Assembly: GCF_001194135.2 (NCBI RefSeq)
Contig: NC_068987.1
Location: 18,964,188-19,028,187 of the forward strand
Length of the DNA: 64,000 nucleotides
DNA from: Octopus bimaculoides
Lineage: Eukaryota
Direction: 5' to 3'
This document shows positions 1,279 to 62,839 of this stretch, one piece after another. Under the pieces are notes generated by a model. It had not been told where the DNA came from. It made no database searches and saw only the letters and a list, made by a program, of their open reading frames with translations. The position numbers and the translations under genes were made by a program. Position 1 is the first letter of the stretch; every line of letters begins with the position of its first letter.

Positions 1279-1556
1279 ATACTTACCAAACATTGAAGTC
1301 TAAATGTGAAATCACTTCAGATAGTGAAACTTGAACTCGACAGACAATAGGGAGAGATTCACTATCAAGTAAACTCTTCAATTTGTTTTCAACCGCAAAA
1401 TCATAGAGAAACATTGATTTCTGTGAGCTGTCTATATATTTTACTCCCACATCTCTTGATTAAAAACAGGGCATCTTTGGATTATATAATTGCATAGAAA
1501 AAAATCTCGTTAATGGCAAAGAAATTAATAATAAATGATCGAGGGAAGTAACTGTC
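1279..1556 (-). promoter_or_regulatory. Promoter/first-exon module M0, serving a gene left of the window
   Basis: Donor GTAAGT on - at 1286-1281; CAAAATCATAGAG core; GAGGGAAGTAACTGTC motif variant at 1541-1556; candidate acceptor TTTGTCAG at ~152. Confidence 0.55.
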
Positions 1557-2083
1557 GGACTTAAAACCCGTCACATAGAACATGTGCTTCTTTTTATTTT
1601 AATGTTTTCGTTTTGTAAGACCATTATATGCACACTTCGATGCATTAGCAGAATCACTTGAGTGTTGGACATGATGATTTTGCTGTATTTCTTCCCGGCT
1701 CCTTACCTTTCTGAGTTTTAACCCTGCCGAAGTCAACTTTGCCTTTCATCCTTTCGGAGTCGATTCAATAAAGTACCAGTCAAGAACTTGGATCAATGTT
1801 ATCGACTACTCTCTCTCTCTTTCTCCGCACTATTACAGTTCTTGTGTCTCAATCAGAAGCTATTATTGTATATTTCTGTTCGTTCACGCTTTCTTTATTA
1901 GATATTTTCGCTCTTTGTTGTCGTCTGATGAACGTTAACTCCTTTTTTTCATGGCAAGTTTCACTATAAGAAAGAAGACACATTAAAGTTGCGCTCATTG
2001 ACTAAGTTTTGACATAGTTATCCCCCAGAAAGGAAAAGGGGGCGATCTTTCGATACCAGCACCAAATATCGGCCTTTTCCGTA

Positions 2084-2188
2084 TTAGGGGCAGGGTTAGG
2101 GTTAGGGACGAATTCCCTAACCCAAACCGTAACCCTAAAACCCTAACTGTAATCCTAACCCTGACCCTAAAACCCTAACCCTAAACCC
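2084..2188. repeat. Interstitial telomere-like repeats in inverted orientation (TTAGGG then CCCTAA)
   Basis: TTAGGGGCAGGGTTAGGGTTAGGG-ACGAATT-CCCTAACCC...CCCTAACCCTAAACCC. Confidence 0.8.
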
Positions 2189-2770
2189 TTCAAAAGAAAT
2201 CGCGCTCTCTGTATCTCGCTTTTACGACGTCGTTTCCCTCTCTGAAGACATGAACAAACAGTATTTGTAGTCCAACGCTGCAAATTAGAAAACTTTTGCT
2301 AATTATACCCAGATTCTCTCAGAATATAACGCTAAGTTGTATCTTTGTGTGGTGATTTTACCATTGATTGAAACTAGCAACCGAGAAATAAGTATTTTAT
2401 TTATAAACACAATTGACGCGTTAATTGACCTTAAGTTAAACATAGAATCTTCTGTTATCTGTGAGACTCCCGAGAAATAATATTTCACATTAAAGATCAG
2501 TCGACGGACGAGATGGTCACATCTGGAATACCTTCGATCAGGGCTGATCAGAGGCCAAGTAACAACCTGTGGTGTCTATCCTTTCCATCATACCTGAACC
2601 CAAGTCCATGTAGCTAAAATATTGTATTTCATAACGGGAAATAAGTCATAAAGGGAAAATATCTTTAAAAATATAAGGAGAGTTACATATCACATCGAGT
2701 GAAGATCTGGTTAGCTTAGATTGCTTCTATTTATTCTTTATGCATACATCCACAAATTCTGTCCGAAGTC

Positions 2771-3089
2771 GAGAATTAGTTCCCTTGATAAAGTATTGTC
2801 AATTCACTCCAGCACCGGCTGTTTATGTATCTATATATCCGATGGATGCAAATTAACGCTGCCGCTACACATAGTTTCTCGCAACTTGCGAGCCATCAAC
2901 CGACTCAAAAGTTACATATATTGTCAGGAAAAAAGAGGATAAGTTTCGTAATATTTTCTCAGTAAGGCGTTAGTCTTATGTAAAGTTCTTTGATAATGAG
3001 ATTGATGTCTTCATCGTTTGAAATACATACAAGTTGTTGCGAAAGTATCCTTCCTTTGTCATATTCGGACTGTATTGATATGTAAGTAT
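2771..3089 (+). promoter_or_regulatory. Promoter/first-exon module M1 (ZNF-1)
   Basis: GAGAATTAGTTCCCTTG (reverse complement of the shared motif) at 2771; TATTCGG..TATTGATAT|GTAAGTAT donor at 3082. Confidence 0.65.
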
Positions 3090-5794: not shown

Positions 5795-5815
5795 TATATC
5801 TTCTTTTATTTCAGA
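5795..5815 (+). other. Candidate splice acceptor of the ZNF-1 coding exon
   Basis: TTCTTTTATTTCAG|A, AG at 5813-5814; resembles acceptors upstream of the other paralogs. Confidence 0.5.
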
Positions 5816-6619: not shown

Positions 6620-7966
6620 ATGGAAGATGAATCAAAGAGTCAGCTTCTTGGAAAAACACAGCCGGAAAATATTGATTTTTCTCATGAGAAACAGGGAGAG
6701 ATGGAGAATAAATCCCACTCCAAAGACATTTTTGCGACAAAAAATAATTTAAAGCCAAAAAAATTTCCTCACTCCGGATCAAAGTCTTACCAATGTAAAG
6801 AGTGTGGCAGAAATTTTACAAGAAACAATTCTTTATATCGGCACCAGCTTATTCATACAGGAGAGAAGCCATACCATTGTGATATCTGTGGTCGAATGTT
6901 TTCACAAGAGAACAGTTTACATAGACACAAGTATATTCACACAGGGAAGAAACCATACCAATGTGATATTTGTGGGAAAAGGTATACTGGGAATAGTGAT
7001 TTATCTTGGCACAAACGTACACACACAGGGGAGAAACCATACTGCTGTGATGTCTGTGGTAAAAGTTTTACCGGAAATAGTGATTTATCTCGGCATAAAC
7101 GAATTCACATGAGAGAAAGACCATATCAGTGTGAAATCTGTGATAAAACGTTCTCTACAAGTAGCCATTTATACAGACACATACGTATTCATTCAGAGGA
7201 TAATCCATCATACCAGTGTAATATTTGTGGCCAAACATTCTCAATCAGTGCTAATCTATCTCGCCATATACGTATTCACACAGGAGAAAAACCATACCAG
7301 TGTGATATATGTGGTAAGGCATTCTCTAGAAAATATGTTTTGTTCAGTCACAAAAATAGTCACTCACAAGTAAAACCATACCACTGTAATATCTGCGGTA
7401 AAATGTTCTCTTACAGTACTGGTTTAAATAGTCATAAACAGACTCATACAGAAGATACACCATACCACTGTGATGGCTCTGATGAAACATTTTCAGACAG
7501 CATTAGTTTATCTTCTCACAAACATACTCACACAGAGGAGAAACTATACTGCTGTGATGTCTGTGGTAAATCATTCTCTGTCAACAGTAATTTATGTAGC
7601 CACAAACGTACTCACACAGGAGAGAAACCATACCATTGTGATATCTGTGATAAAACATTTTCTAGGAGTAGCTCTTTGTCTACTCACAAACGTTTTCACA
7701 CAGGTGAAAAACCTTACCACTGCAATATCTGTGGTAAATCATTCTTTGCTGCTAGTGGTTTATATTTCCACAAACGAACTCACACAGGAGAGAAACCACA
7801 CCATTGTGAAATCTGTGGTAAAACATTTTCTATGAGTTATAGTTTATCTAACCACAAACGTACACACACAGGAGAGAAACCATATCACTGTGGTGATTGT
7901 GGTAAAACATTTACTTACAACAGTTCTTTGTATCGTCACAAAAGGATTCACAGAAATGATAAATAA
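6620..7966 (+). CDS. Multi-C2H2 zinc-finger protein (ZNF-1), 448 aa, 14 fingers (9th degenerate, CDGS) after a ~56 aa charged N-terminal extension
   Basis: ORF track shows repeated Cx2Cx12Hx3H units with TGEKP linkers; ATG start, TAA stop; no recognisable KRAB/BTB/SCAN domain. Confidence 0.93.
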   Translation: MEDESKSQLLGKTQPENIDFSHEKQGEMENKSHSKDIFATKNNLKPKKFPHSGSKSYQCKECGRNFTRNNSLYRHQLIHTGEKPYHCDICGRMFSQENSLHRHKYIHTGKKPYQCDICGKRYTGNSDLSWHKRTHTGEKPYCCDVCGKSFTGNSDLSRHKRIHMRERPYQCEICDKTFSTSSHLYRHIRIHSEDNPSYQCNICGQTFSISANLSRHIRIHTGEKPYQCDICGKAFSRKYVLFSHKNSHSQVKPYHCNICGKMFSYSTGLNSHKQTHTEDTPYHCDGSDETFSDSISLSSHKHTHTEEKLYCCDVCGKSFSVNSNLCSHKRTHTGEKPYHCDICDKTFSRSSSLSTHKRFHTGEKPYHCNICGKSFFAASGLYFHKRTHTGEKPHHCEICGKTFSMSYSLSNHKRTHTGEKPYHCGDCGKTFTYNSSLYRHKRIHRNDK

Positions 7967-14017: not shown

Positions 14018-15163
14018 TCAGTTATTTGGCTTCTCTTCTGTATGAATTTTTTTGTGTCTCGTTAAATGCTTTTTTTCAGAAAATGATTTGCTGCAGACAT
14101 CACAACTGTATGACTTCTCTCCTGTATTCTGATGAGTATTTGAATGACATCTTTGAGAAAATGATTTATTACATACACTACAATGATATGGTTTCTCTCC
14201 AGTATGAGTATGTACATGTTTCATTAAAGGACTTATTTCAGGAAATAATTCACTACATACATCACACTGATACGGTGTCTCTTCTGTGTGGATACGTATA
14301 TGTGTTGCTAATATGTTTCTATGAGAGAATGATTCGTCACAGATATCACACTGATATGGCTTCTCTTCTATATGAATACAATTGTGTTTGGTTATTTGGT
14401 TCATGTCAAGGAAGAATTTACCACAAATATCACAGCGATATGGTCCTTCTTCAGCATGAATAAGCTGGTGTCTATTTAAGGCAGTTTTCTGAGAAAATGA
14501 TCGATCACATATATCACAGTGAAATGGCTTCTCACCTGTGTGAACACGTTTGTGTCTAGTCAAGCCGCTTCTTTGAGGAAATGCTTTATCACAGATATCA
14601 CACTGAAACGGTTTCTCTCCAGTATGAATACGTGTGTGATGGGTTATTTGGCTGACACAAGTGAATGATTTGCCACATATATCACAGTGATACGGCTTCT
14701 TTTCTTTATGAATATACTTGTGTGTATTTAAATTACTTTTTTGTGAGAAACGTCTGAAGCATATATCACATTGATATGGTTTCTCTCCAGTATGAATAAG
14801 TACGTGTTTAGTTAAATTATTTCTTTCAGAGAATGATTTACCACAAATATCACAATGATATGGCTTTTCTCCTCCATGGATGTATTTGTGTGTAGATAAG
14901 TGACATTTTCGGGAGAAAGATTTACCACAGATATCACAGTGATACGTCTTTTCATCTGTATGAATATGTTTGTGTCGAGTTAAGCTTCCCCTCCGAGAGA
15001 AAGTTTTTCCACAGACTTCACAGAGAGACGCATTTTCTCGCATATGATTAAATTTATGTGCTGTTAAAACTCTTTTCTGAGAGAAAGTTTGACCACAGAT
15101 ATCACAAGGATATCGACTCTCTCCTGTTGGAATACGTTTATGTTGAGATATCAAACTGCTCAT
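14018..15163 (-). CDS. Multi-C2H2 zinc-finger protein (ZNF-2), 381 aa, 13 fingers (12th lacks the final His)
   Basis: ORF track; TGEKP-linked fingers; the stop arises from a frameshift in the ancestral last finger. Confidence 0.9.
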   Translation of the reverse strand: MSSLISQHKRIPTGESRYPCDICGQTFSQKRVLTAHKFNHMRENASLCEVCGKTFSRRGSLTRHKHIHTDEKTYHCDICGKSFSRKCHLSTHKYIHGGEKPYHCDICGKSFSERNNLTKHVLIHTGEKPYQCDICFRRFSQKSNLNTHKYIHKEKKPYHCDICGKSFTCVSQITHHTRIHTGEKPFQCDICDKAFPQRSGLTRHKRVHTGEKPFHCDICDRSFSQKTALNRHQLIHAEEGPYRCDICGKFFLDMNQITKHNCIHIEEKPYQCDICDESFSHRNILATHIRIHTEETPYQCDVCSELFPEISPLMKHVHTHTGEKPYHCSVCNKSFSQRCHSNTHQNTGEKSYSCDVCSKSFSEKKHLTRHKKIHTEEKPNN

Positions 15164-15310: not shown

Positions 15311-15927
15311 AACCAATATTTTATGGCTTTTTATGCAATATTTTTCCTTCAAATCTTCACATTTTCACCACACAGCAGCAACAACAACAACAAAATAATT
15401 TTCGTTCTTTCCTGCCAACAGCCAATAACAAGATGGCTTATAAGTGAACAATCATTCCTGAGATAATTATTCCAAGAGATGTAATTAGGATAGAATTCTG
15501 TCTTGCAATGAAAAATCAGGAAGTTTAAAAAAAAAACACAAAAAATAGTTCCACTTATCACATAGATTCTATATGAAAATTCCCATCAAGAAACCGAATG
15601 TATATTTATGGTAAATTAGTTTAAGGTTTATATACAAAATCATTAAGAGGATGTGTTGAAAAATGGAGGTCAAATCTCAAATACTGTGATACAAAGTACT
15701 GAAGAAATTCCCAAATAAATAGTGATATATGCTGTATCCCAACAAACCTATGGCAGTTTGATAAAATGGACATTAAAATATAAAGGATGATGATGAATTT
15801 AATCCAGGATTTGAATGAACAGCTTTATACGAGATCTTCATAAAAACCACTGTTTCTTCTTCAATTAAGAATAATTATGTTGATGTATCTTAAGTGAAAT
15901 CTTCATGTTCATAATACCACTTGATAT

Positions 15928-15945
15928 CCTAAAATAAAAAAAACA
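15928..15945 (-). other. Candidate splice acceptor of the ZNF-2 coding exon
   Basis: On -: TTTTTTTATTTTAG|GATATC. Confidence 0.55.
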
Positions 15946-16262
15946 GTATATTAAAAGAGTGTTTGATATTAACTTGAATATTATAAAATAAAATACAAGA
16001 TTACTCCATAAAAGTATGTTCTACTAAGTCTCATAAACAAGCTGCACTAATTCAATTTGCAATTATTTGATTGATAGAAATTACTAACGAAGAAGCCCCC
16101 AATGATGCAATTTGATTGGTGGAGAACTAATTCTCAAAATCTAAATGCAGATAGATCTTTCCAAATTATTGCAATATACAAACACCAATATCATCTCATA
16201 AACAGCAAGAATATATTTTTACTAACATTATGTCTAGAATATTTACAAAAAGAGATCGATAG

Positions 16263-20125: not shown

Positions 20126-20893
20126 ATCCCAATTTATGATGCTTAAAATATACACATCCGAAGAAATCACGGCTTTTGACGCACAAGATAATTCCAATTA
20201 TAATCTTCAAGAACACTTATTTTGTCCCATTACAAAAAAAAAAAAAAATATTGATACCGAAATGCGGTAAAGTACCTAAGAAAAAAAAAACAAAAACGGC
20301 AACAATTTCCAAAACTTATTTTGTGGAAACCATACGTCTATTTGATGGGAAACTGCCACACCCTATTTTCAATAAAAGATTCAATTAATAAAACCTGTTT
20401 AGGAGAAAAACAAATTTATTCCTATAGGAAAAAAAAAAAGAAAAAGGAAAAACAAAACAAAAACAACACCACTACGTTTTAGTTTGAATGTGGTAATTAA
20501 CAGTTGTTTTATAAAGTAAGAATTTTAATTAAAAGACACCTTATATATATCGAGGATAACCAGAATTTTGTTCATGGAACCAACCCAGTTGGAGAAAATC
20601 AGTCTAAGACAAACGAACCGGTCGCAGCACAACGCTAAGAAAAAATTCTTCCGCCGGCCGCCAAAGAAAATATATAAAAAAATTAAAACCCATCTGAATA
20701 AAAGGCCTGACTAATCCAACCAAAATTCATATAGATTCCCCAATTTCTTTAATTCTTAGCATTTTCGGCTAATTTCATTGTGTAAGAATAAACAGACGTT
20801 GTAGAAACACTTGAATAGACTAATAAACATTGATATACATGTATGTTAATAAAACTGACATACATATATGTAGATATTAGATGTATATATATA

Positions 20894-21182
20894 ATACTTA
20901 CAAATCAATATAAGTGCGAATATATATATGGCAGATGTCCTAATAAGGTCGGATTCAGTCTGCGAGAACAAACTAAGACCTCACCACACAACTTCCCGAT
21001 CTTAAAAAATGTTTATAAACAACAAAATCTCGAAGTAAACACGATCAATGGCTTTGTGATGCCAATTACTACAGATCTCGACAGAAGTCTTATCTCACAT
21101 ATGATAACCTTGTCATAAAAGAGGAAGCGTTGGAGAATAGCTATGAAAATAAAGGCAAAAATATATGAGGGGAACTAACTCT
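20894..21182 (-). promoter_or_regulatory. Promoter/first-exon module M2a (ZNF-2)
   Basis: ATACTTACAAATCAAT (donor at 20901); AGGGGAACTAACTCT at 21168-21182; followed by a GA repeat. Confidence 0.7.
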
Positions 21183-21959
21183 TTCTTTATGTAATAGAGA
21201 GAGAGTAGGAGGAGAGTAGACAATAGAGATATTTGGCAAAATCAGATTAAAATAGTCATTGAGTTTTCCTATCCTCACCGCATCTAATATTAATTAGATT
21301 CTCCGCCTCACAACATTAAAATGCGAGCCTTGTACTTGGTTTATGAGATTTGTTTTGGCTTAATGGAATATCAATTTGTTTATGGGAGTATTTTTTGTAA
21401 TGATTTAATACATAATATTCATTTCATATTGAAATAGTACTTTCCTTTCTTCACCAGATAAGTATTAATAATTAATTTGATTCCACCCCCTCACTCATTA
21501 CATTAAACAGCAGGCATGACAAAGTATTAATTTGTTCACTGAATATTTTACATTTACATTTTATGAGTGGGGTTGTTCAATATTTTTAACAATAAAGTTT
21601 ATATAAAGGTTGAAAAAATAAAGCTAATTATTCAGTTTCTTAGTTTAAAGTTTAAATAAAAGGTTTTGTTCATTTCTTTTCTCCAACAGTCATTTTCTCA
21701 CTTCTAAACCCAATCACTACTAAACCATATCCATCTCTGCACTTGTTAAGCCTTCCGACCCTCTGCTTTGCTTCATTGCAGAACTCTTCAACACAGAATC
21801 ACATCCTACACTACACCAACCGTATTTGACCCAATGGCATTTGAACTCAGTGACTGGTTAGAGTTCTATGAGTTTCATGCCACTTATCCCTGGTATCACA
21901 TATTTCACTTTTGAGCCATCAAAAACAGTTAGGTGGGTGACTGAAACTATCCTTTAGGG

Positions 21960-24840: not shown

Positions 24841-25108
24841 ATACTTACAAATCAATACACACCGAATAGGAAATATGCCAGATGTCCTCGTATGATCAGT
24901 CTGCGAGAGCAAGCAAACTAAGTCTCATCACACACAACTTTGTGATCTTGAAAATTTTTAGAATCAACAAAATCATAAAGTAAACATCAATGCGTTTGAG
25001 ATAAAAATTACTACATATCTCCACACAAGTTTTTAGCTCACTTATGACAAACCTTGGATGAATGAATGACGGAGAACGTCTACAAGAACTGTCAGGGGAA
25101 CTAACTCT
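24841..25108 (-). promoter_or_regulatory. Promoter/first-exon module M2b (extra copy with no gene of its own)
   Basis: ATACTTACAAATCAAT (donor at 24848); AGGGGAACTAACTCT at 25094-25108; aligns with M2a. Confidence 0.7.
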
Positions 25109-25496
25109 TTGTTTATGTAATATAGAGAGGGAGAGAGATACAAATAGAGAGGGGTGGAGTTAATACGTGTATATGTGAGGGAGTCAAAGATACACAGATA
25201 GAGAGAGGAAGAAAGAAAAAACGTGTATGAGATTGTGAACAACAGAGAGACGGTTCTTCCTCTGAAATAAAGCACTGTTAATCTTTAACGTGGAATTAAC
25301 GGATGCTTAGTGTTTCTCGAACTTTTTAAACTCTTGCTCCTTTACTTATACTAACATTCTTTCAACGTACCCCCTTGTTACAGTTGCACGAAAAACACGC
25401 TACAAAATTTGCTGCTGACAAGTTGGTTACCATTTGATAAGTCGCTTTATCAACATATGGAATATCAAAACATCATTTCGACCAATATTATTTCTA

Positions 25497-33724: not shown

Positions 33725-33964
33725 ACACTTACAAATAAACGGAGTCCGAAAGTGATATCTGGGAGATGTCCTGAATACAGTCTGATTTAGTCTACAAGAG
33801 TACACTAACCCTCGCGACACTCAAGTTTCTGATCTTGAAATTTCCTTTATATACGACAAATCATAAAGAAGACACCATCAGAATTCATACAGCTAATTAT
33901 TAAAGACCTCTACCTCAGATAAACCTCATAACTAATGTTTACAATAAACAAGGGAACCAACTCT
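33725..33964 (-). promoter_or_regulatory. Promoter/first-exon module M3 (ZNF-3)
   Basis: ACACTTACAAAT (donor at 33732); AGGGAACCAACTCT at 33951-33964. Confidence 0.65.
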
Positions 33965-40563: not shown

Positions 40564-41091
40564 CAATAATAGCTAAAATATCTCTACTTGTCAACACAGA
40601 TCCATACAAACATTCTTGTTCATTCAAATACTCAGTGAATTATTCAATCCAGCACGCATTTCAAGGTAGTTGATATTTATACTGAGGTTAGTTTCAGTTG
40701 AAAGGAAATCTTTCACAGTATTTGTAAATGAAAGATGAATGCTTGATAAAAAAAATTACTATATACTGTCAATAGAAGGTATTTGGGAAAAAGGTAGATT
40801 TACAAAGGTGTGTGAAAAAAATGAGGAAGATCAGATTTCAGAATGATGTGTTTCTAAGAAGTGGTGATAAAAAAAAAACCCAACGTAACTGGTGATTTGC
40901 TGTATTCCAACAAATCTGTGTTTGTTTCATAAAATATGCATTAAAATGCTGAGGATGATGATCTTGATGAATTCAACCAAGGATTTCTGCAAACATATGT
41001 TCTTCATAAAGTCTTCCTATTATCTTCAAAAATTGATGAACATATTGATGCATCTGAATTGTAAAGTCTTCAGGCCCATTTCACATGATAT

Positions 41092-41108
41092 CCTGAAATA
41101 GAAAAACA
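41092..41108 (-). other. Candidate splice acceptor of the ZNF-4 coding exon
   Basis: On -: TTTTTCTATTTCAG|GATATC. Confidence 0.58.
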
Positions 41109-41658
41109 GTATAATATACAAGATTATTTAATATTGGTTTTAAATTTTGGCACAAGGCCAGCAAGAGGGGGGGAGGAGGTAAGTTAATTACATCAACCTC
41201 GGTGTTCAACAGGTACTTATTTTATCAACTCCAAAAGGATGAAAGGCAAAGTTGATCTCAGCAGAATTTGAACTTAGAATGTGAAGACAGGCGAAATATT
41301 GCTTAGCATTTTGCCAGCATGCTAATGATTCTGCCAGTTCACTGCCTTAGCTAAGGGTTTTGTCCGGAATGCTGATGATTCTGCCAGCTCAAATAATCTT
41401 TTCTACTATAGGTACAAGGCTTGAAATTGTGAGGAGGGGGCAGGTCGATTACGTCAACCCCAGTGCTCGACTGGTACTTATTTTATCGATGCTGAGAGGA
41501 TGACAGCCAAAAGCAATTACGACAGTATTTGAACTCAGAACGTAAAACCCAAAGAAATAAAAGTAATGATGATTTCTTTCATTTGCCACAAGGGTGACAA
41601 TACAAAGACAGGCATGAAGAGCGAGGATTTGCATAGAATGGAATGAAGAAGAATATAG

Positions 41659-41728: not shown

Positions 41729-41794
41729 AGAATATAGGAAGTATACGTGGTATACCATTAACAAATGAAAAGAAGTACACATGATATAATAATA

Positions 41795-42080
41795 ATACTT
41801 ACAAACCAAATAATCCAAATGTAAAATATTGGTAGATGTCTTTTTACTGTCAGATTTAAAGTCTACGAAGGCAAACTAAGTGTCACCCGTACACAAAATA
41901 TCACGATTTTGAATTTCTTTACCCACAAAAAAATCATAAAGCAGACATTAATAATGCTTTTGTGTCGACAATTATTATTAATTCCTACACAAGTTCACCT
42001 GACATCTGAATAAATAAGTGTATTTATTCTAAATAATGTTTGGAGATTATCGACAATAAGCTATCAGGGGAACAAACTCT
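41795..42080 (-). promoter_or_regulatory. Promoter/first-exon module M4 (ZNF-4)
   Basis: ATACTTACAAA (donor at 41802); AGGGGAACAAACTCT at 42066-42080; GA repeat upstream. Confidence 0.68.
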
Positions 42081-42247
42081 TCCACCGCGCGCGCACCTGT
42101 GTTTGAGATAGAGAAACAGAATGAGAGAGAGAGAAAGATAAAGAGGGAAGGAGAGGAAAAGTGATAAGGGAGGCAGAGAAGGGGATAGACAGAGAGAAAG
42201 GGACAGACAGAGAGAAAGAGAGAAAATGGGTAAAACAGATAGATATA

Positions 42248-44752: not shown

Positions 44753-45883
44753 CTAGGGTGGTTTTTCTCCAGTATGAGTACGTTGGTGTTTAGTTAACTG
44801 ATTTCTTTCAGAAAATGATTTACTGCACACATCACACTGATATGGCTTCTCTCCAGTATGAATACGTTTGTGTCGAGTCACTTGGCTTCTGCCAGTGAAT
44901 GATTTGCCACAGACATCACAGTCGTATGGCTTCTCTCCAGTATGAACAAGGTGGTGTGTAGTTAGGTGACCTCTTTGAGAAAATGATTTATCGCATATAT
45001 CACACTGATAGGGTTTCTCCCCAGTATGAATACGTACATGTTTTATTAAGGGACTCCTTTCAGAGAATGCCTTTCCACAGATATCACACTTATATGGTTT
45101 CTCTCCTGTGTGAACACGTATGTGTGTAGTTAAAATATGGCTGTAAGAAAATGATTCACCACAAATATCACAGCGATATGGCTTTTCTCCTGCATGAATA
45201 TTCTTGTGTGAAGTTAAGTTACTACTTCGAGAAAACGACTTCCCACAGATATCACAATGATATGGCGTCTCTCCTGTATGAACACGTTTGTGTATTATTA
45301 AGCTACAACTTTGGGAGTATGATTTATCACATATATCACAATGATATGGCTTTTCTCCTGTGTGAGTATGTTTGTGTATGGTCACGTAAGCTTTTTGAAA
45401 GAATGATTTACCACAGATATCACAGTGATATGGCTTCTTTCCTGTATGAATTTGAATGTGTTTATTCAGATTATTTTTCTTAGAAAAAGATTTACCACAT
45501 GTATGACAGTCATGTGGCCTCTCTCCAATATGAACATGTTTATGAGATGTGAAAAGACTTCTTTGAAAGAATGACTGACCACAGATTTTGCAGAGATATG
45601 ACTTCTCTTCTCTATGAATACATTTGTGTTGGGCTCCTCGACTTGTATCATATGGTTCACTACAGATTTCACAGGGATAGGATGTTTCTCCTGCGAGAAT
45701 ATTTTTGTGATCAGATAATGCATTGCTCATAATGAAACTTTTGCCACAAATATTGTTAGTATGAACTATTGATCCTCCAATAATTAATTTATGTTCAGTT
45801 AATTGATTTCTTATGATGAATGACTTCACACTAATGTCACATAGAAATGGTTTCTTCAGTATCTGATCACAGCATTTATACAT
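44753..45883 (-). CDS. Multi-C2H2 zinc-finger protein (ZNF-5), 376 aa, 2 degenerate N-terminal fingers plus 11 fingers, 3' truncated by frameshift
   Basis: ORF track; the start could be ATG 45883 or the paralog-equivalent ATG at 45730 (MSNALSDH). Confidence 0.88.
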
Positions 45884-46223
45884 ATGTATATAATTACATT
45901 TTATGCAATTTCTTCTTTAGAATTTCTATTTTCATCACATTATACGAAATCATTTTTCATTCTTTCCTTTACCTTATTTATAAGAAATATTTTTCTCCCT
46001 ATAAGTTTGATATCACAGTTATCTTTGTCAATTTCTGAAAATGTTGCAGAAAAACCAAACAAATTATTTGAGTTAGTTGTTCCAATAGGATTAATTATGA
46101 TAAACTTAAGCCAAGATTTACATGTAAAGGTTTCCGTGTATTCTTCATAAAGTCTTTCTTTCCTTTTCAAAAGATGATAAATATGTTGATGCAGCCAAAG
46201 TGAAAAATCTTTATATCCGATAA

Positions 46224-46240
46224 CCTGAAATAAAGAAACA
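46224..46240 (-). other. Candidate splice acceptor of the ZNF-5 coding exon
   Basis: On -: TTTCTTTATTTCAG|GTTATC. Confidence 0.58.
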
Positions 46241-47131
46241 AATTCATGTATAAGAGTTAATTTAATACTAAGGTTGAAAGTTATAAAAACAGAAAAGAAC
46301 CCAAAACAGTCATGTTTATACATTGGAGTGAAAAGGACTATCTACGCATCCTTAAGTAGAGGTACATACCTCTCTCTTTCTCTCTCTCTATATATATGTA
46401 GTGGATCTTGCATGCATGAAGTGGATTCGATCCACCATAGCCAAATTTAAATTAACACTACAACAGAACTTTTCCCACGGTGGAACAATGGTATATATAT
46501 NNNNNNNNNNNNNNNNNNNNNNNNNNNNNNNNNNNNNNNNNNNNNNNNNNNNNNNNNNNNNNNNNNNNNNNNNNNNNNNNNNNNNNNNNNNNNNNNNNNN
46601 NNNNNNNNNNNNNNNNNNNNNNNNNNNNNNNNNNNNNNNNNNNNNNNNNNNNNATATATATATATATATATATATATACGAGTATATATACAGGAGGCCA
46701 CTAGGTGGACTGATAAAGTGCTAGAAGAAGATCACATGTCATGTGTCTACTAAGACCGAATAATTCTCAAAGGGAATTTAGCGAAGCAACAAAAAAAAAA
46801 AATGTTCTTTGCTTCTATGTAATACATTGGGAAAATGTATTTTATACCTTGTCAGTGAATTTTGTTTGTGGAAATTGTACAGAGGGTTAGTGTGTGTGCG
46901 TGCGCACATGTACTTGAATGTTGATATTCCATGGCTTGAGATGTCACAATCTGAGCGAAACTGATGTGATATTTACATTCCTTTTTGACATCATGAACGG
47001 TCATTTTGTATTTTCAATGACATGTGAATTAATATAAAAAAACAACCTTCACTCAAAAAATCGCAGAAATAACATCTGGTCATAAAATTATGCTGTAAAT
47101 AAGACACCGTCTAATCCACAAGAAAACAGAT

Positions 47132-47820: not shown

Positions 47821-48326
47821 GTTAATTTTTCCCCATGGATTGGGTCTTACTTGCAGCACAATTTTTTGGCCAGATTGCAGATAACAGTGTCCCGAAAGGA
47901 ACTGGGTGTTTGATGGAGTTGAACACAGCACAGCTAGATGTTGCCTTACCTACAGAGCAGACTGTGGATCCGACCAGGTACTAAATTGTTACCTGATGGG
48001 TGAGTTTCCTTAATCCAACTGATCCAAATTACACAGATGATCGAGTGGCAGTTGATATCAGATAAGCACATGTGGAGAGCTAAATTAAACAACCCAAAAT
48101 AGCTTTACCGTAATATATAAATTGTATATCTTGGTACGTATATATAAGTGTCATTTTCTTCCCATTTACTTTCGTTTCGTTTGTTTAATTCCTTTTGTTA
48201 ATAAAATCTCTCGTTTCGATCACTCATTAAAATAGTTAATAACTAGATATAATCAAACTAATGAAGTTCATAGGATAATCGTTTATTCCTTTGTCATCCC
48301 TTTTCTTTATATATATACATATATAA

Positions 48327-48607
48327 ATACTTACAAATCAGTTTAGTCCGAATGTGTGCAGAATGGTAGATGCCCTCATATATTGAGTCTTAATGTGTTG
48401 TCCGCGAAAACAAAATCAGTCCCACCACACTCACAAAACTTCTTGGACTTGAAAATGCAAACAACAAAATAAACAAAGAAGACACTTATCAATGCCAATA
48501 TTTCAGACCTCTACATAAGTTTATCTCACGTCTGATAACCGTGTGATAAACAATAATTATTGTTATTGGAGAGATTTCTACAATAAACTACCAGGGGAAC
48601 TAACTCT
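48327..48607 (-). promoter_or_regulatory. Promoter/first-exon module M5 (ZNF-5)
   Basis: ATACTTACAAATCA (donor at 48334); AGGGGAACTAACTCT at 48593-48607. Confidence 0.7.
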
Positions 48608-48626
48608 TTTTCTTCTCTGCGAGAGA

Positions 48627-48993
48627 ATGTGGTTGGCACTCCGTCGGTTACGACGACGAGTGTTCCAGTTGATCCGATCAACGGAACAGCCTGCTCGTGA
48701 AATTAACGTGAAAGTGGCTGAGCACTCCACAGACACGTGTACCCTTAACGTAGTTCTTGGGGAGGTTCAGCGTGACACAGTGTGGCCCCTTTGAAATACA
48801 GGTACAACAGAAACAGGAAGAAAGAGTGAGAGAAAGCTGTAGTGAAAGAGTACAGCAGGGTTCGCCACCATCCCCTGCCGGAGCCTCGTGGAGCTTTTAG
48901 GTATTTTCGCTCAATAAACACTCACAACGCCCGGTCTGAGAATCGAAACCGCGAGTCCGCTGCCCTAACCACAGGTCCATTGCGCCTCCACAT
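48627..48993 (-). mobile_element. SINE family C inserted next to the ZNF-5 promoter motif
   Basis: 11-bp TSD TCTGCGAGAGA at 48616-48626 and 48994-49004. Confidence 0.9.
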
Positions 48994-56404: not shown

Positions 56405-57640
56405 TCAGTAACTAGTTTCATCTCCTGTATGAATAAGCCTGTGTTTGGTTACCTGAAATTTATAAGAGAATGATTTACCACAGATATCACAGCTATGAGG
56501 CTTCTCTCCTGTATGAATGCGTTTGTGTCTAGTTACATGATTTCTTTCAGAAAAGAATTTACCACAGATATCACAGCTATATGGCCTCTCTCCCGTATGA
56601 GTATGTTGGTGTGTAGTTAAATGACCACTTTGAGAAAAAGATTTATTACATATAGTACACTGATATGGTTTCTCTCCTGTATGAATACGTACATGTTTAG
56701 TTAAATGACTACTCTCAGAGAATGACTTGCTACATATATCACACTTATATGGCTTCTCTCCTGTATGAATACGTATGTGTGCAATCAAAATATATCTCTG
56801 GGCAAATGATTCACTACAGATGTTACAGTGGTATGGCTTTTCTCCTCCATGAACAAATTTGTGTGAAGTCAAGTTACTTTTCCGAGAAAACGATTTATCA
56901 CACATGTCACAGGAATATGGCTTCTCTCCAGTATGAACCCGTTTGTGTTTAGTTACTTGGTGCGTATCTGTGAAGGATTTACCACAAATGTCACAGCGGT
57001 ACGGCTTCTCTCCTGTATGTACGTAATGGTGTGTAGTTAAGTGACATTTTTGAGAAAAAGATTTATCACAGATATCACAGTGATATGGTTTCTCTCCTGT
57101 ATGAATACGTTTGTGCTGGATTGTTTGGCTTTTATCAGTGAATGCTTTATCACAGATATCACACTGATATGGTTTCTTACCTGTATGAGTATATTTATGT
57201 CTATTTAAACTACCTCTTTGAGAGTACGTTTTCCCACAGACATCACAATGAAACCGATTTTTCGCTACATGAATAAACTTATGCGCTGTTAAAACACTTT
57301 TTTGAGAGAATGATTTACTACAAATATCACAGGTATATGGTTTTTCTCCTGTGTGAATCCGTTTGTGCGTAATTAAATCACATCTCTGAGAGAAAGATTT
57401 ACTGCAGGCAAAGCAACTATATGGCTTTTCTTCTGAATGAATATATTTGTGTCGGGTTACCTGGCCCGTGTCAGAGAACGTTTTACCACAGATTTCACAA
57501 GCGTATGGCTTCTCTCCCGTGTGAATATAATTGTGTGTAGTTAAGTGGCTTTTGCGAGAAAATGATTTACCACAGATTTCACAAAGATACGGTTTCTCTT
57601 TTGTGTGAACAAGAATTTGTTGAGATAACAAACTGCTCAT
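56405..57640 (-). CDS. Multi-C2H2 zinc-finger protein (ZNF-6), 411 aa, 14 canonical fingers
   Basis: ORF track; all fingers retain C2H2; last seven fingers colinear with ZNF-4. Confidence 0.93.
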   Translation of the reverse strand: MSSLLSQQILVHTKEKPYLCEICGKSFSRKSHLTTHNYIHTGEKPYACEICGKTFSDTGQVTRHKYIHSEEKPYSCFACSKSFSQRCDLITHKRIHTGEKPYTCDICSKSFSQKSVLTAHKFIHVAKNRFHCDVCGKTYSQRGSLNRHKYTHTGKKPYQCDICDKAFTDKSQTIQHKRIHTGEKPYHCDICDKSFSQKCHLTTHHYVHTGEKPYRCDICGKSFTDTHQVTKHKRVHTGEKPYSCDMCDKSFSRKSNLTSHKFVHGGEKPYHCNICSESFAQRYILIAHIRIHTGEKPYKCDICSKSFSESSHLTKHVRIHTGEKPYQCTICNKSFSQSGHLTTHQHTHTGERPYSCDICGKFFSERNHVTRHKRIHTGEKPHSCDICGKSFSYKFQVTKHRLIHTGDETSY

Positions 57641-58400
57641 AGTGAATCTTCAACTACAACTGTAGTATTGTTGCCTCAGTAACATGATGTTTTTACAATT
57701 GTCTTCAGCCTCTAATTACAAAACTTAATATTTTATAACTTTTTCGTTTTCAGCTTGAAATTTATATAATTTCTTCATCAAAAGTTTCAATAGCTATCAC
57801 AACACAAAAATATTTTCCTTTTTTTTCTTTAATCTTTCCACAATATTTCTTCCAATATATATTTCTAAGACCAGTTATTTTTGTCAAATTCTGAAAAGGT
57901 TATAGAATGCCACGATAATTGTTCCAAGACAATTAATTAGGATAGAATTCTTTTGTAATAAAATGCCAGAAAGTAAAGAAATCGCTAAAATAGTTTACTT
58001 GCTAGCATAGATCCAAATATGAAAAGTCATTTAAATATTCTTAGTTTAATCTCTGTACAAAATTATCCAGTACATATGTTGCCGTAGCTATGAAAAATGA
58101 TGATTAAATTCAATCAAGATATATTCCACAATATTTGTCAAGGGAGGGGGAATCTTGGCAGAAAAAAAATTATCATTTCTTTTCAATGGAGGATGATTGT
58201 GGAAAATGAAGGTTTAATACAAATGTGTGTGAAATTTGGAAGCGAAATCTTAGAAAACTGTGTCTTGAAGAGGTGAGAAAAGACTAAGATGGCTGGTTAT
58301 ATATTAACAAACCTATGTGCGCTTCATGGAGTTTTCTTTTCATTTTCAAAAATTGAATGTATTAATGCATCAGAAGAGAAAAATCGTTCTGTCCATGTCC

Positions 58401-58417
58401 CCTGAAATAAATAAACA
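58401..58417 (-). other. Candidate splice acceptor of the ZNF-6 coding exon
   Basis: On -: TTTATTTATTTCAG|GGGAC. Confidence 0.55.
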
Positions 58418-58495
58418 ATATAATATATACTACATAATTTAATAAAGAGATACAAAAAAAATCTCTCCTAAAAATTCAGGCTATTAAATATTATC

Positions 58496-59692: not shown

Positions 59693-59850
59693 GCGAGCTG
59701 GCAGAAACGTTAGCACGCCGGGCGAAATGCTTAGCGGTGTTTCGTCTGCCGCTACGTTCTGAGTTCAAATTCCGCCGAGGTCGACTTTGCCTTTCATCCT
59801 TTCAGGGTCGATAAATTAAGTACCAATTGCGCACTGGGGTCGAATATATG
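59693..59850 (+). mobile_element. SINE family A
   Basis: GCGAGCTGGCAGAAACGTTAGCACG...GTTCTGAGTTCAAATTCCGCCGAGGTCGAC. Confidence 0.82.
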
Positions 59851-59902
59851 ACTTTGGGATCGCTAAATTCTGGTAAATATTGGTTCTCTCTCTATATTCT
59901 TC

Positions 59903-60315
59903 TATTCTTTAACTTGTTTCAGTCGTTTGACAGCGGCCTTGCTGGAGCACCACATTTAGTCGTACAAGTCGAATCCCAGGACTCATTCATTCTAAGCCTA
60001 GTACCTATTCTATCGGTCTCTTTTGCCGAACCGCTAGGTTACGGGGACATAAACACTCCAACATCGGTTGTCAAGCGATGGCGGGAGGACAAACACGGAC
60101 ACACACACACACACACGTACAAATACATACATAATACATACATACATACGCACACAGACACGCCCCCCCCATATATATATATATATATATATACTACTTT
60201 TAGTTTCCGTCAACCAAATCCACACACAAGGCTTTGGTCATCCCGAGGCTATAGCAGAAGACACTTATCCAAGCTGCTAGTGCAGTAGGACTGAACCCGG
60301 AACCAGGTGGTTGGG
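59903..60315 (-). mobile_element. SINE family B ending at a gap
   Basis: Aligns with 26493-26874. Confidence 0.8.
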
Positions 60316-62556
60316 NNNNNNNNNNNNNNNNNNNNNNNNNNNNNNNNNNNNNNNNNNNNNNNNNNNNNNNNNNNNNNNNNNNNNNNNNNNNNNNNNNNNN
60401 NNNNNNNNNNNNNNNNNNNNNNNNNNNNNNNNNNNNNNNNNNNNNNNNNNNNNNNNNNNNNNNNNNNNNNNNNNNNNNNNNNNNNNNNNNNNNNNNNNNN
60501 NNNNNNNNNNNNNNNNNNNNNNNNNNNNNNNNNNNNNNNNNNNNNNNNNNNNNNNNNNNNNNNNNNNNNNNNNNNNNNNNNNNNNNNNNNNNNNNNNNNN
60601 NNNNNNNNNNNNNNNNNNNNNNNNNNNNNNNNNNNNNNNNNNNNNNNNNNNNNNNNNNNNNNNNNNNNNNNNNNNNNNNNNNNNNNNNNNNNNNNNNNNN
60701 NNNNNNNNNNNNNNNNNNNNNNNNNNNNNNNNNNNNNNNNNNNNNNNNNNNNNNNNNNNNNNNNNNNNNNNNNNNNNNNNNNNNNNNNNNNNNNNNNNNN
60801 NNNNNNNNNNNNNNNNNNNNNNNNNNNNNNNNNNNNNNNNNNNNNNNNNNNNNNNNNNNNNNNNNNNNNNNNNNNNNNNNNNNNNNNNNNNNNNNNNNNN
60901 NNNNNNNNNTATATATATATATATATATATATTAATACATACATAAGGATAAGCATATTAAAAGGGGAAAACTCAAATAAAAGGGTTGGAAGCCACTATT
61001 CTATCGCTTCAAGATCCACTGGAGTAACTTGATATATTTACGCACCACGCAATTAATTATTGAAATTAGTTATTACTAATTTCTCCCCAGGAAGACTTAG
61101 GGGGGGGGGATTACCAAATTAGACATTAGTGTGTGCGTGAGGAAATTGACTAGGAATCCAACAGAGAAGAATATTGTTATACACCAAAAATTATCCATAT
61201 ATTTTATTAGCAACCTCAATTACAATCGGGTTAAAGTTGAGGAAAAATTTTAAGAAAGAAAAAAAGTATCTAACACCTGAATATGTTCCAAACTCTCTCG
61301 ACTTGAACAACAACCATCCTGGCCAATTTTTAATTCCGAAAGATGATGCAACAGTACAAAATAATGATGCAATACTTGTAATGTAACCGTTTCAAACAGG
61401 GTGGGAGAAAATAAGGGGAAATCAAAAATTACTGAATTTGCTTCCTACACTCCAATATATTTCTTTTTAGACTTTACACGAAGGCCTTTCTTCTGCTACA
61501 GTTTGAATATAAATTTTTTCACTGATGACAAAACTTTCGGGTAGCAAAATGAGGTGTTTTTACGGCATTTTTGGCTTTGAGACAAAATATATTTTTTACA
61601 AATGTTCACTATCTTACAAAAACTAAGCAAGTGGCCTATCTTAAATGCACTAAAGCATTATAACATAATCAGGTCACTATTTCAGGAAATTATCGCCGTT
61701 GTCTTTGAGCATGTAAAAGACAAATTTGGTTATGGCAAAATGAGCAAGACAAGATAATTCAAAAATTAGCCGCTTCAGTTCTCCGGAAAACAGACTCATA
61801 CACATCAATATCCATTTCTAGACATCAGAAAGATCGGAAATGTAAAAACAAATTGAAATATCTAGGTCAAATGAAAGAGGATCAGGGGAAAATGGTACAT
61901 ATGAAATTAACGAAACTCGACTAAAAAAAACAAAACAAAATACTAACATAAAATATTCTACAGCTTTTTCCCGATCTGCTGGAGTGTCCTCTCCGTGATA
62001 TATTTAAACGCCATGCAGTTAAAGAGATAAATTATTGAAATAAACCATTACTCATTTTACCCCATTTTAGACATTTTTGAAACTTGAAAATTGTCAAATT
62101 AGACATTAGAGTGGGAAAAGAATTGACTTAGAATCAAACAGAGAAAAGGATACTGATTGGTAAACACTAAGAATAATCTATATATTTTATTAGTAACCCC
62201 GATTACAATCGGATCAAAGTTGAGGAAAAATTTCTTGAAAAATTAGGACCTACCAACCTGACTGTTCTAGACTCCCTCAACTTCAACAACTATGCTGACC
62301 AATTCCTAAATATAATGTAACAAAATACAAAAATGATGATGCAATATTTGCAATGTAATAATTTCAAAACTTGTAAAGAAAAAATAACGAGAAAACGGAG
62401 GTTACTCATTTTGCCCCATTACTAATTCCATTCCCCATCAGTCAAATATCAAGCGTTACCTTCATGCATATTCCGCGCTTTCTTTTATTTTAAGCTTTCA
62501 GTTAACTTCCTTTGGCAACAGACATAATTAAAACATTAGATAGACTATAAACAACA

Positions 62557-62839
62557 ATACTTACAAATCAATGTATTCCGTATTCCGAATCTGGTAAAAA
62601 CAGTAATAGCCTGCGTATTGTCAGAGGCCACGAGAGCAAACTAAGCTTTCACCACTCACAACGTCCTGATCGTGAATGTCCATATAACAACAAAATCATA
62701 AAGGGAATATCATTAATGGTTTTTGCAGTGCCATTTGCACTCGATCTCTCCATAAATGTACAGAACATCTGATTAACCGTGCGAAGCTCTGGTAAACGTT
62801 AAGATACTAATTACAATGACCTATAAAGGGATTTAACTC
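62557..62839 (-). promoter_or_regulatory. Promoter/first-exon module M6 (ZNF-6)
   Basis: ATACTTACAAATCAAT (donor at 62564); CAACAAAATCATAAAG core; AGGGATTTAACTC at 62827-62839; GA repeat upstream. Confidence 0.65.

What the first reader, a model, noticed from the sequence alone, without database searches (positions are those of the whole stretch)
1279..62839. One conserved promoter/non-coding first-exon module precedes every ZNF gene (8 copies)
Seen: a ~220-295 bp block recurs at 1279, 2771 (inverted), 20894, 24841, 33725, 41795, 48327 and 62557. Each copy has a GTAAGT donor, usually in the context GATTT|GTAAGT, usually an internal CAAAATCATAAAG-like core, and an AGGGGAACTAACTCT-like motif about 260 bp upstream. 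Several are followed by a GA repeat. Each is oriented with a ZNF gene and lies upstream of a conserved TTTCAG|G-type acceptor. Known: octopus genomes carry roughly 1,800 clustered C2H2-ZNF genes. Inference: the duplicating unit is promoter + short UTR exon + TE-filled intron + ZNF exon, and GGGGAACTAACTCT is a purifying-selected TF site that may co-regulate the family, possibly bound by a ZNF itself.
Basis: partly seen in the sequence, partly recalled or inferred. Interest (0 to 1): 0.78.

Follow-up and report, generated by a model that had tools for sequence, protein, structure and literature searches.

The report
Shared upstream exon module of octopus ZNF genes
Each of the six tandemly duplicated zinc-finger genes in this Octopus bimaculoides stretch keeps the same ~280-base upstream block, which starts with a 28-base motif and ends at a perfect splice donor; it is most likely a shared promoter plus non-coding first exon, an expected feature of a duplicated gene family, and no transcript data could be obtained to confirm it.

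Summary
Six blocks are clearly homologous: 20894, 24841, 33725, 41795, 48327 and 62557, all on the minus strand. A seventh, independent copy lies just outside the window at about 66668-66931 (+). The 2771 copy keeps only the motif and the donor. The 1279 copy is marginal, and GenBank annotates it as the coding first exon of a 309-aa gene.

Each block starts at the motif AAGAGTTAGTTCCCCTGATAGTTTATTGT. It ends 233-311 nt later at GTAAGTAT; seven of the eight GTAAGTAT octamers in the window sit at block ends. DNA upstream of the motif and inside the intron is not conserved.

All six C2H2-ZNF ORFs have such a block 0.7-5 kb upstream in the same orientation. The five minus-strand genes also share a conserved TTATTTCAG|G acceptor.

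The block has no conserved ORF, RNA structure, Rfam hit or tRNA. The best reading is a paralog-shared proximal promoter plus non-coding exon 1, inherited by tandem duplication.

No other octopus loci could be fetched, so family-wide use is unknown. Shared promoters and first exons are already known for zebrafish ZNF clusters. Interest is modest.

The parts
1279..1570 (-). Marginal block copy. Donor GTAAGTAT at 1279-1286 and a motif-like ACAGTTACTTCCCTCGATCATTTATTAT near 1556. GenBank has a 309-aa gene model whose coding sequence starts at 1414 inside it.
   Evidence: PWM 6.7 bits, within the shuffle range. Not detected by nhmmer. Gene model.
2771..3089 (+). Divergent block copy for the plus-strand ZNF gene. 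Motif GAGAATTAGTTCCCTTGATAAAGTATTGTC at 2771-2800; donor GTAAGTAT at 3082-3089.
   Evidence: PWM 22.4 bits against a shuffle maximum of 8-13. nhmmer hits only the motif and the donor, each E 0.015.
5806..5815 (+). Candidate acceptor TTATTTCAG|A for the plus-strand gene. It is less certain than the others because the acceptor profile does not detect it.
6620..7966 (+). U06: 448-aa C2H2-ZNF coding sequence in a single exon, annotated in GenBank.
14018..15163 (-). U14: 381-aa C2H2-ZNF coding sequence starting at the conserved M of (R)FTMSSL.
15791..15969 (-). Conserved acceptor region of U14. The AG ends at 15929. It covers about 40 nt of intron and about 130 nt of leader, including the upstream ATG in ATGAAG.
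   Evidence: E 8.8e-35.
20891..21204 (-). Block copy. Motif 5' end at 21183; donor G at 20901.
24838..25133 (-). Block copy with no ZNF of its own in the window. Motif 5' end at 25109; donor G at 24848. It is the closest relative of the 20894 copy (71% over 356 nt).
29784..30917 (-). U29: 377-aa C2H2-ZNF coding sequence.
31019..31191 (-). Conserved acceptor region of U29. The AG ends at 31148.
   Evidence: E 1.9e-19.
33722..33989 (-). Block copy. Its motif has a 3-nt deletion (5' end at 33965). Donor GTAAGTGT, with G at 33732.
38865..40100 (-). U38: 411-aa C2H2-ZNF coding sequence.
40965..41135 (-). Conserved acceptor region of U38. The AG ends at 41093. A GenBank 209-aa model ends 23 nt downstream, at 41070.
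   Evidence: (E 2.8e-40).
41792..42091 (-). Block copy in the cleanest unit, with a gap-free 709-nt interval to the acceptor. Motif 5' end at 42081; donor G at 41802.
42110..42218 (.). GA-rich microsatellites directly upstream of the 41795 motif.
44753..45883 (-). U44: 376-aa C2H2-ZNF ORF. It is not on record as a gene product; GenBank instead has a 209-aa model spanning 45883 to 41070.
46098..46269 (-). Conserved acceptor region of U44. The AG ends at 46225.
   Evidence: E 8.5e-39.
48325..48632 (-). Block copy. Motif 5' end at 48608; donor G at 48334. A young interspersed repeat (48628-48992) abuts it 20 nt upstream of the motif.
56405..57640 (-). U56: 411-aa C2H2-ZNF coding sequence.
58278..58446 (-). 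Conserved acceptor region of U56. The AG ends at 58402.
   Evidence: E 2.4e-33.
62554..62865 (-). Block copy. Motif 5' end at 62841; donor G at 62564. A GA-rich repeat at 62851-62897 lies directly upstream.

Best explanation
The window is part of a tandem C2H2-ZNF cluster on Octopus bimaculoides chromosome CM046607.1, at about 18.96-19.03 Mb. Each gene unit was copied whole by tandem duplication. Since then everything has decayed or been overwritten by transposons except four parts.
1. A block of about 280 nt that begins with the 28-nt motif AAGAGTTAGTTCCCCTGATAGTTTATTGT and ends at the 5' splice site (T/G)|GTAAGTAT.
2. A 3' splice site region, with about 45 nt of branch and pyrimidine tract, TTATTTCAG|G, and about 110 nt of leader.
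3. Patches of the leader.
4. The single-exon ZNF coding sequence, which starts at a conserved M in a decayed first finger.

The block is most likely the proximal promoter plus a non-coding first exon. The motif would be the most upstream required cis-element, recruiting a sequence-specific factor. Transcription would start somewhere in the 14-75 nt after it. The roughly 200-nt exon would be spliced to the acceptor 0.7-5 kb downstream.

Shown: the anatomy, the boundaries, the orientation and the non-coding nature of the block. Inferred: transcription, start-site position, splicing of the named donor-acceptor pairs, and factor binding.
For: HOMOLOGY AND BOUNDARIES.
- Identity between motif and donor is 57.6% against 32.5% for shuffles (z 10.7). 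The 250 nt upstream give z -0.1 and the 250 nt of intron give z 2.8.
- Local-alignment z averages 22 for the block, with all 15 pairs above 4. It averages 4-5 for the flanks.
- Conservation inside the block is uneven: motif 0.75, donor 0.84, spacer 0.13-0.27, which is lower than any column permutation.

SPLICE SIGNALS.
- GTAAGTAT, which is fully complementary to U1, occurs 8 times in 128 kb of both strands. Seven of those are at block ends. The copy outside the window also has it.
- The five acceptor regions are homologous, and the profile finds no other copy of that region in the window.

ARRANGEMENT.
- All six ZNF ORFs have a block 0.7-5 kb upstream in the same orientation, and there is no block anywhere else in the window.
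- Paralog units share nothing else collinear upstream of the block, so it is the 5'-most conserved element.

NON-CODING, NOT A STRUCTURED RNA.
- No ORF crosses the donor in the five minus-strand genes.
- RNAalifold gives -4.97 kcal/mol with a covariation term of -0.37.
- There are no Rfam or tRNA hits.

ANNOTATION.
- A 309-aa GenBank model starts its coding sequence in the 1279 block, and the frame closes at the donor unless it is spliced.
- A 209-aa model ends 23 nt past acceptor 41093, in the frame expected if that acceptor is used.

MOTIF.
- The motif is retained at 22.4 bits in the distant paralog U06.
Against: - No RNA-seq, CAGE or Iso-Seq evidence could be obtained, so exon status and start site are inferred only.
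- Block identity is no higher than four-fold-site identity of the paralogous coding sequences (54-75%). Substitution-level constraint over the whole block is therefore not demonstrated. Indel and transposon turnover could account for the unalignable flanks.
- The predicted leaders carry 9-22 upstream ATGs over 230-990 nt. That is awkward for one continuous 5'UTR and suggests an unrecognised further intron.
- No conserved TATA or initiator lies at a fixed distance, and the spacing from the motif to the next conserved sub-block varies from 14 to 54 nt.
- The 24841 copy has no gene of its own.
- The 1279 and outside-window copies have degenerate motifs.
- Four of the six predicted introns contain assembly gaps of unverified continuity (U14, U29, U44 and U56; the U06 and U38 introns are gap-free).
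Confidence: 0.7

Rival explanations
1. The block is an internal 5'UTR exon rather than the first exon. The CT-rich tract upstream of the motif would act as a pyrimidine tract, an AG at the motif's 5' edge would be an acceptor, and the real promoter would lie further upstream.
For: CT-rich tracts or microsatellites precede the motif in 5 of 7 copies. AG dinucleotides occur in the conserved AAGAG at the block's 5' edge.
Against: The AGs sit in AAG or GAG contexts behind a purine-rich stretch, which makes poor acceptors. No further collinear conserved block exists upstream of any block. In the 48327 copy a young repeat lies 20 nt upstream.
Confidence: 0.1
2. The block is a cis-regulatory DNA element, such as an enhancer, insulator or boundary site, that is retained next to each gene but is not itself an exon.
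For: A 28-nt motif sits at the edge of the conserved DNA. Conservation spreads over about 200 nt without coding or RNA-structure signal.
Against: It does not explain why every copy ends at GTAAGTAT, including intron positions +7 and +8, nor why 7 of 8 such octamers in the window are there. It also does not explain the strict co-orientation with the gene.
Confidence: 0.08
3. The block is a relic with no present function. It could be an old dispersed repeat or a neutral remnant of the duplicated unit that happens to remain alignable.
For: Block identity (about 58%) is not above four-fold-site identity of the coding sequences. Two copies (1279 and the one outside the window) have decayed motifs.
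Against: Flanks of the same age are unalignable. Conservation inside the block is significantly uneven, with the motif and donor nearly fixed. All copies are upstream of and co-oriented with genes, and there are none elsewhere in 64 kb. Interspersed repeats in the window are 83-96% identical and randomly oriented.
Confidence: 0.07
4. The block is a decayed coding exon of a lost N-terminal domain, analogous to the KRAB or FiNZ exons of vertebrate ZNF genes.
For: GenBank annotates the 1279 copy as a coding first exon of 43 codons. An ATG in TTTATGATTTTG recurs in 4 of 7 copies.
Against: The peptides from that ATG are unrelated and stop before the donor. Indels are not multiples of three. The 1279 ORF has no Pfam match.
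Confidence: 0.04

Closest known systems
Zebrafish chromosome-4 FiNZ/ZNF gene cluster with shared promoter architecture and alignable first exons (Wells et al. 2023, PMC10547256; it cites Hadzhiev et al. 2019 and 2023)
   Same: Hundreds of tandemly duplicated ZNF genes keep a common promoter type and a first exon similar enough that one morpholino targets 447 of 684 genes. This is the same principle of paralog-shared 5' modules that allow co-regulation.
   Different: There the first exon is coding, because it holds the start codon and the FiNZ domain, and the early-expressed class has a clear TATA box. Here the block is non-coding, no TATA was found, and the products are bare finger arrays with no effector domain. 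Expression timing is unknown.
Clustered protocadherin variable-exon promoters with a conserved sequence element (from my own knowledge; not tested here)
   Same: A short conserved element sits at a roughly fixed position upstream of every member of a tandem array, and it underlies promoter choice.
   Different: Those elements are bound by CTCF and lie upstream of coding variable exons. No binding data exist here. The motif's reverse complement (CTATCAGGGGAAC) resembles the CTCF core only loosely. Octopus protocadherins are whole-gene duplicates (PMC9068888).
Mammalian olfactory-receptor and KRAB-ZNF gene architecture (from my own knowledge)
   Same: Short non-coding 5' exon(s), a variable intron, then one large exon carrying the whole or most of the coding sequence. 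Family members share promoter-proximal motifs.
   Different: The motifs differ, and KRAB-ZNF genes have separate KRAB coding exons. No homology is implied.

Membership tests
U2-type spliceosomal intron bounded by the block's donor and the conserved acceptor | GT at the 5' end with U1 complementarity | tested here: met
   GTAAGTAT in 8 of 9 copies and GTAAGTGT in one. Seven of the eight octamers in the window are at block ends.
U2-type spliceosomal intron bounded by the block's donor and the conserved acceptor | Pyrimidine tract plus AG at the 3' end, conserved among paralogs | tested here: met
   TTATTTCAG|G with about 45 nt of conserved upstream tract in five minus-strand genes. The plus-strand gene's acceptor is only a candidate.
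U2-type spliceosomal intron bounded by the block's donor and the conserved acceptor | Spliced transcripts joining the two sites | not testable with these tools
No transcript contigs were found for the ZNF products.
RNA polymerase II promoter with first exon | Mapped transcription start or open chromatin at the block | not testable with these tools
   No CAGE, ATAC or long-read data were reachable.
RNA polymerase II promoter with first exon | It is the 5'-most conserved element of each gene unit and is co-oriented with the gene | tested here: met
RNA polymerase II promoter with first exon | Core elements (TATA or initiator) at a fixed distance | tested here: inconclusive
   There is no conserved TATA. 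An initiator-like TCAGAT/TCATAT in the second sub-block lies at a variable distance (14-54 nt) from the motif.
Dispersed repeat / transposable element | Copies scattered without regard to genes and orientation | tested here: not met
   In the window plus flanks, all copies are upstream of and co-oriented with gene models, and none lies elsewhere. The genome-wide copy number could not be tested.
Structured non-coding RNA | Match to a known family, or a conserved structure with covariation | tested here: not met
   Zero Rfam hits and zero tRNAs. The consensus fold is -4.97 kcal/mol with a covariation term of -0.37.
Zebrafish-type shared ZNF promoter / first exon | Tandem ZNF paralogs share an alignable first exon | tested here: met
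Zebrafish-type shared ZNF promoter / first exon | The first exon carries the start codon and an N-terminal domain | tested here: not met
   No ORF reaches the donor in the core copies. The products are finger-only.
C2H2 zinc-finger genes | Tandem C2H2 fingers with TGEKPY linkers | tested here: met
   Pfam zf-C2H2 and zf-H2C2_2, E 1e-55 to 1e-110. There are 10-14 fingers per ORF.

The most novel reading that the evidence does not exclude
The 28-nt motif could be the common control element of a large part of the octopus-specific C2H2-ZNF expansion. It would be bound by one dedicated factor, possibly a family member, and would give coordinated or stochastic one-of-many promoter use in neurons or embryos, in the manner of protocadherin or olfactory-receptor promoter choice. 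Its retention in a paralog only 49% identical in protein hints that it reaches beyond one subfamily.
Probability: 0.12. Interest if true: 0.75.

Novelty: new member of a known kind. Interest (0 to 1): 0.36.

Why it matters
If transcripts confirm it, the block gives correct 5' ends for octopus ZNF genes. The GenBank models here are coding-sequence-only or chimeric. It also supplies a concrete 28-nt candidate element for asking how roughly 1,800 lineage-specific ZNF genes are switched on together or individually. A profile of the block could be used genome-wide to find, orient and pair ZNF promoters. By itself, retention of a promoter and first exon among tandem duplicates is expected biology.

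Tried and rejected
- Other octopus loci. A ZNF protein search was swamped by vertebrate ZNFs and returned no cephalopod protein. It did not even return the window's own paralog, which scores 787 bits locally. The non-finger N-terminus of U06 found nothing. Exact-sequence cluster look-ups said the window's proteins are not in that collection. Five look-ups of ZNF products by exact sequence returned only the same GenBank chromosome or nothing. No paralogous or orthologous loci and no transcript contigs were obtained. The third protein search and the representative search were left unused as futile.
- The 209-aa GenBank model. Rebuilding its exon structure gave 53 valid three-exon solutions, so it is ambiguous.
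- The conserved ATGAAG in exon 2 as the true start codon. Rejected, because in-frame stops follow within 4-26 codons and no frame-compatible splice into the ZNF frame was found.
- A hidden ZNF or acceptor for the 24841 copy. None lies between 21204 and 24841, but the gap at 23692-24085 could hide one.
- Known factor sites. GATA-like TGATAG, a Cdx/Sox-like TTTATTGT, a COE-like TCCCNNGGGA half-match, and CTCF-like and B-box-like resemblances come from memory only. None is convincing and none was tested.
- Literature. Three full-text searches found no description of a shared promoter or first exon for cephalopod ZNF genes. Albertin et al. 2015 is not held.

Full report
WHERE THE WINDOW COMES FROM

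Exact look-ups of the ZNF products place the window on Octopus bimaculoides assembly GCA_001194135.2, chromosome CM046607.1, at about 18,964,188-19,028,187. The sequence is 35.5% G+C. It has nine N-gaps, three more than the finding listed: 46501-46653, 59412-59421 and 60316-60909.

It holds six long ORFs made of 84-nt finger repeats:
- U06, 6620-7966 (+)
- U14, 14018-15163 (-)
- U29, 29784-30917 (-)
- U38, 38865-40100 (-)
- U44, 44753-45883 (-)
- U56, 56405-57640 (-)

Pfam sees only C2H2 fingers and no effector domain. The proteins are 47-72% identical to one another, and U06 is the outlier at about 49%. GenBank annotates U06, U14, U29, U38 and U56 as single-exon coding sequences. The four minus-strand ones start at a conserved M inside a decayed first finger, (R)FTMSSL.

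GAPS, CHECKED FIRST

The sequence itself shows the following.
- No block, donor, acceptor or ORF touches a gap.
- The gap at 19111-19120 is flanked by an exact 47-nt overlap (19064-19110 = 19121-19167). It is a false gap between overlapping contig ends.
- The gaps at 18578, 46501, 59412 and 60316 abut TA or TG microsatellites.
- For 19779-20125, 23692-24085, 27694-27806 and 32343-32515 I found no cross-gap evidence either way.

Two units are gap-free and show the whole architecture on uninterrupted sequence: block 2771 to U06, and block 41795 to U38. The other four units repeat the same order and orientation across their gaps. Random mis-joins would not produce that.

IS THE REPEAT REAL?

Yes, for six copies. 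MAFFT and BLAST align 20891-21204, 24838-25133, 33722-33989, 41792-42091, 48325-48632 and 62554-62865, all on the minus strand. Global identity is 49-63%, and local identity is 67-77% with E 1e-7 to 7e-35.

A profile built from these six finds one further, independent copy just outside the window, at L002 707-895 with E 1.3e-16. In window numbering its motif is at 66668 and its donor G at 66924, on the plus strand.

The 2771 copy is recognised only at its two ends, the motif and the donor, each at E 0.015. Its motif scores 22.4 bits against a shuffled-window maximum of 8-13.

The 1279 copy is not detected by the profile. Its motif-like site scores 6.7 bits, within the shuffle range. It is nevertheless the tenth-best site of about 124,000, and it lies 270 nt from a GTAAGTAT. 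I treat it as a possible, much-decayed copy.

BOUNDARIES

The conserved DNA starts within a few bases of the motif and stops at the donor.
- Between motif and donor, mean identity is 57.6% against 32.5% for shuffles (z 10.7).
- The 250 nt upstream give z -0.1, and 250 nt of intron give z 2.8.
- With local alignment the block has mean z 22, and all 15 pairs exceed 4. The flanks have mean z 4-5, driven by low-complexity tracts.

Conservation inside the block is uneven. Pairwise identity is 0.75 at the motif core and 0.84 at the donor. It is 0.55-0.67 in several sub-blocks (TTTATGATTTTG, TTTCAAGATCA, CTTAGTTTG, GGACATCT). It is only 0.13-0.27 in a spacer after the motif that varies from 14 to 54 nt, which is lower than any column permutation.

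In the 48327 copy a young interspersed repeat (48628-48992, 83-94% identical to three other copies) sits 20 nt upstream of the motif. GA-rich or CT-rich tracts precede the motif in five copies.

SPLICE SIGNALS

The octamer GTAAGTAT is complementary to the whole 5' end of U1. The 33725 copy has GTAAGTGT, and the outside copy has GTAAGTAT.

Each minus-strand ZNF ORF has a homologous region 230-990 nt upstream. This region has about 45 nt of A/T- and pyrimidine-rich intron, TTATTTCAG|G, and about 110 nt of leader. A profile of this region finds exactly five copies and nothing else. The plus-strand gene has TTATTTCAG|A at 5806-5815, but that site is not profile-supported.

The DNA between donor and acceptor is 0.7-5 kb long. 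It is not conserved between paralogs and contains SINE-like and other repeat fragments.

WHAT THE BLOCK IS NOT

- It is not coding. No ORF runs from an ATG into the donor in the five minus-strand genes. Peptides from the recurrent ATG differ and stop early, and the indels are not in threes.
- It is not a known or structured RNA. Rfam and tRNA scans are empty, and the consensus fold is -4.97 kcal/mol with a covariation term of -0.37.
- Within this window it is not a dispersed repeat. Every copy is upstream of and co-oriented with a gene model, whereas the real interspersed repeats here are 83-96% identical and randomly oriented.

ANNOTATION HINTS

A 309-aa GenBank model to the left of the window starts its coding sequence at 1414, inside the 1279 block. 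The open frame closes on the TAA that overlaps the donor, so the model must splice there or earlier.

A 209-aa model spans 45883 to 41070. It ends 23 nt after acceptor 41093, in the frame that closes with TGA if that acceptor is used. Its internal exons could not be recovered, because 53 three-exon solutions fit. The full U44 ORF is not on record as a product.

These models show that gene prediction used sites in or next to the blocks. I cannot tell whether transcripts supported them.

INTERPRETATION

The simplest account is tandem duplication of a whole unit: block, intron, then a leader and ZNF exon. Only the functional parts were then retained.

The block is the 5'-most conserved piece, is co-oriented with the gene, is non-coding, and ends at a near-perfect donor that pairs with a conserved acceptor. 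It is therefore most likely the proximal promoter plus a non-coding first exon. The motif would be its most upstream required element.

The motif's survival in U06, whose block has otherwise decayed, argues for selection on the motif itself.

The 24841 copy is the closest relative of the 20894 copy (71% over 356 nt). It has no acceptor or finger remnant downstream before the next block. It could be an alternative first exon for U14, an orphan, or the promoter of a gene hidden in the gap at 23692-24085.

The two ends of the cluster are head-to-head pairs: 1279/2771, and 62557 with the outside copy.

CAVEATS

- Nothing here shows transcription.
- Four-fold-degenerate sites of the paralogous coding sequences are 54-75% identical, which is no lower than the block. 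Those sites may be inflated by codon bias and array homogenisation. Even so, constraint on the whole 200-nt exon is not proven. The secure signals are the motif, the donor, the sub-block pattern and the contrast with the flanks.
- The leaders, read as one piece, hold 9-22 upstream ATGs. One of these is a conserved ATGAAG about 75-87 nt into exon 2 in most genes. A further intron or uORF-based control is possible.
- No conserved TATA or initiator lies at a fixed distance.
- What binds the motif is unknown. Resemblances to GATA, Cdx/Sox, COE or CTCF sites come from memory and are weak.

COMPARISON AND NOVELTY

Shared promoters and first exons among tandem ZNF paralogs are documented for the zebrafish chromosome-4 cluster. 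There a common promoter architecture exists, and one morpholino against the aligned first exon targets 447 of 684 genes (PMC10547256). In that case the exon is coding and a TATA box is evident, so the octopus case differs in both respects.

Full-text searches found no description of such a module for cephalopod ZNF genes. The octopus chromosome paper describes only cluster sizes and locations (PMC9068888).

I rate this a new member of a known kind. It is useful for annotation and as a lead to family-wide regulation, but it is not surprising. Its generality beyond this 68-kb stretch is untested, because no other octopus DNA could be reached with the tools available.

Noticed in passing
window 2085-2190: An interstitial telomere-type repeat in inverted arrangement: (TTAGGG)3, then (CCCTAA)n degenerate for about 75 nt. 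It lies in the 1.2-kb head-to-head spacer between the 1279 and 2771 blocks.
   Followed up: no
window 19064-19167: The 10-N gap at 19111-19120 is flanked by an exact 47-nt duplication (19064-19110 = 19121-19167). This points to overlapping contig ends that were joined with a spurious gap and a duplicated segment.
   Followed up: yes
window 46501-46653, 59412-59421, 60316-60909: Three assembly gaps lie inside the finding's span but were not in the program's list. Two of them fall in the predicted introns of U44 and U56.
   Followed up: partly
L002 707-985, equivalent to window numbering 66668-66931 (+), outside the window: A ninth block copy on the plus strand, head-to-head with the 62557 copy. 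It has a degenerate motif (GAGAGTTACTTTTCTTGATAA) and donor GTAAGTAT. Its gene lies beyond the fetched DNA.
   Followed up: partly
window 41070-45883 (-): GenBank carries a 209-aa multi-exon model that starts at the U44 ATG and ends 23 nt past the U38 acceptor. It looks like a chimera of two neighbouring ZNF genes. The intact 376-aa U44 ORF is not on record as a product.
   Followed up: partly
window 12449-12832, 27317-27690, 29203-29573, 48628-48992, partial 18398-18572: A young interspersed repeat family, 83-94% identical in both orientations. One copy is inserted 20 nt upstream of the 48327 motif. Two copies end at assembly gaps.
   Followed up: no
window 25554-25905, 41215-41559, 43465-43551, 58594-58723, 59693-59807, 1709-1781: A SINE-like repeat (AAGGATGAAAGGCAAAGTCGACCTCGGCAGAATTTGAACTCAGAAC...) scattered in introns and spacers. 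ARAGORN calls no tRNA in it.
   Followed up: no
window about 15842, 31098, 41008, 46149, 58328 (-): A conserved upstream ATG in the context (T/C)(T/C)ATGAAG lies 50-87 nt after the acceptor in all five minus-strand genes; U06 has ATGTGT at the equivalent position. It opens short, unrelated uORFs of 4-26 codons.
   Followed up: partly
window 49289-49296 (-) and 34474 (-): The only GTAAGTAT not at a block end lies about 680 nt upstream of the 48327 motif. A second, weaker motif-like site (9.6 bits) lies about 510 nt upstream of the 33725 motif.
   Followed up: no
window 40100-40211, 45883-46051, 57761-57907: The DNA just upstream of the annotated start codons still reads as decayed fingers, for example KSFIIRNQL shared by U38 and U44. 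The arrays appear to be eroding from their N-terminal end.
   Followed up: no
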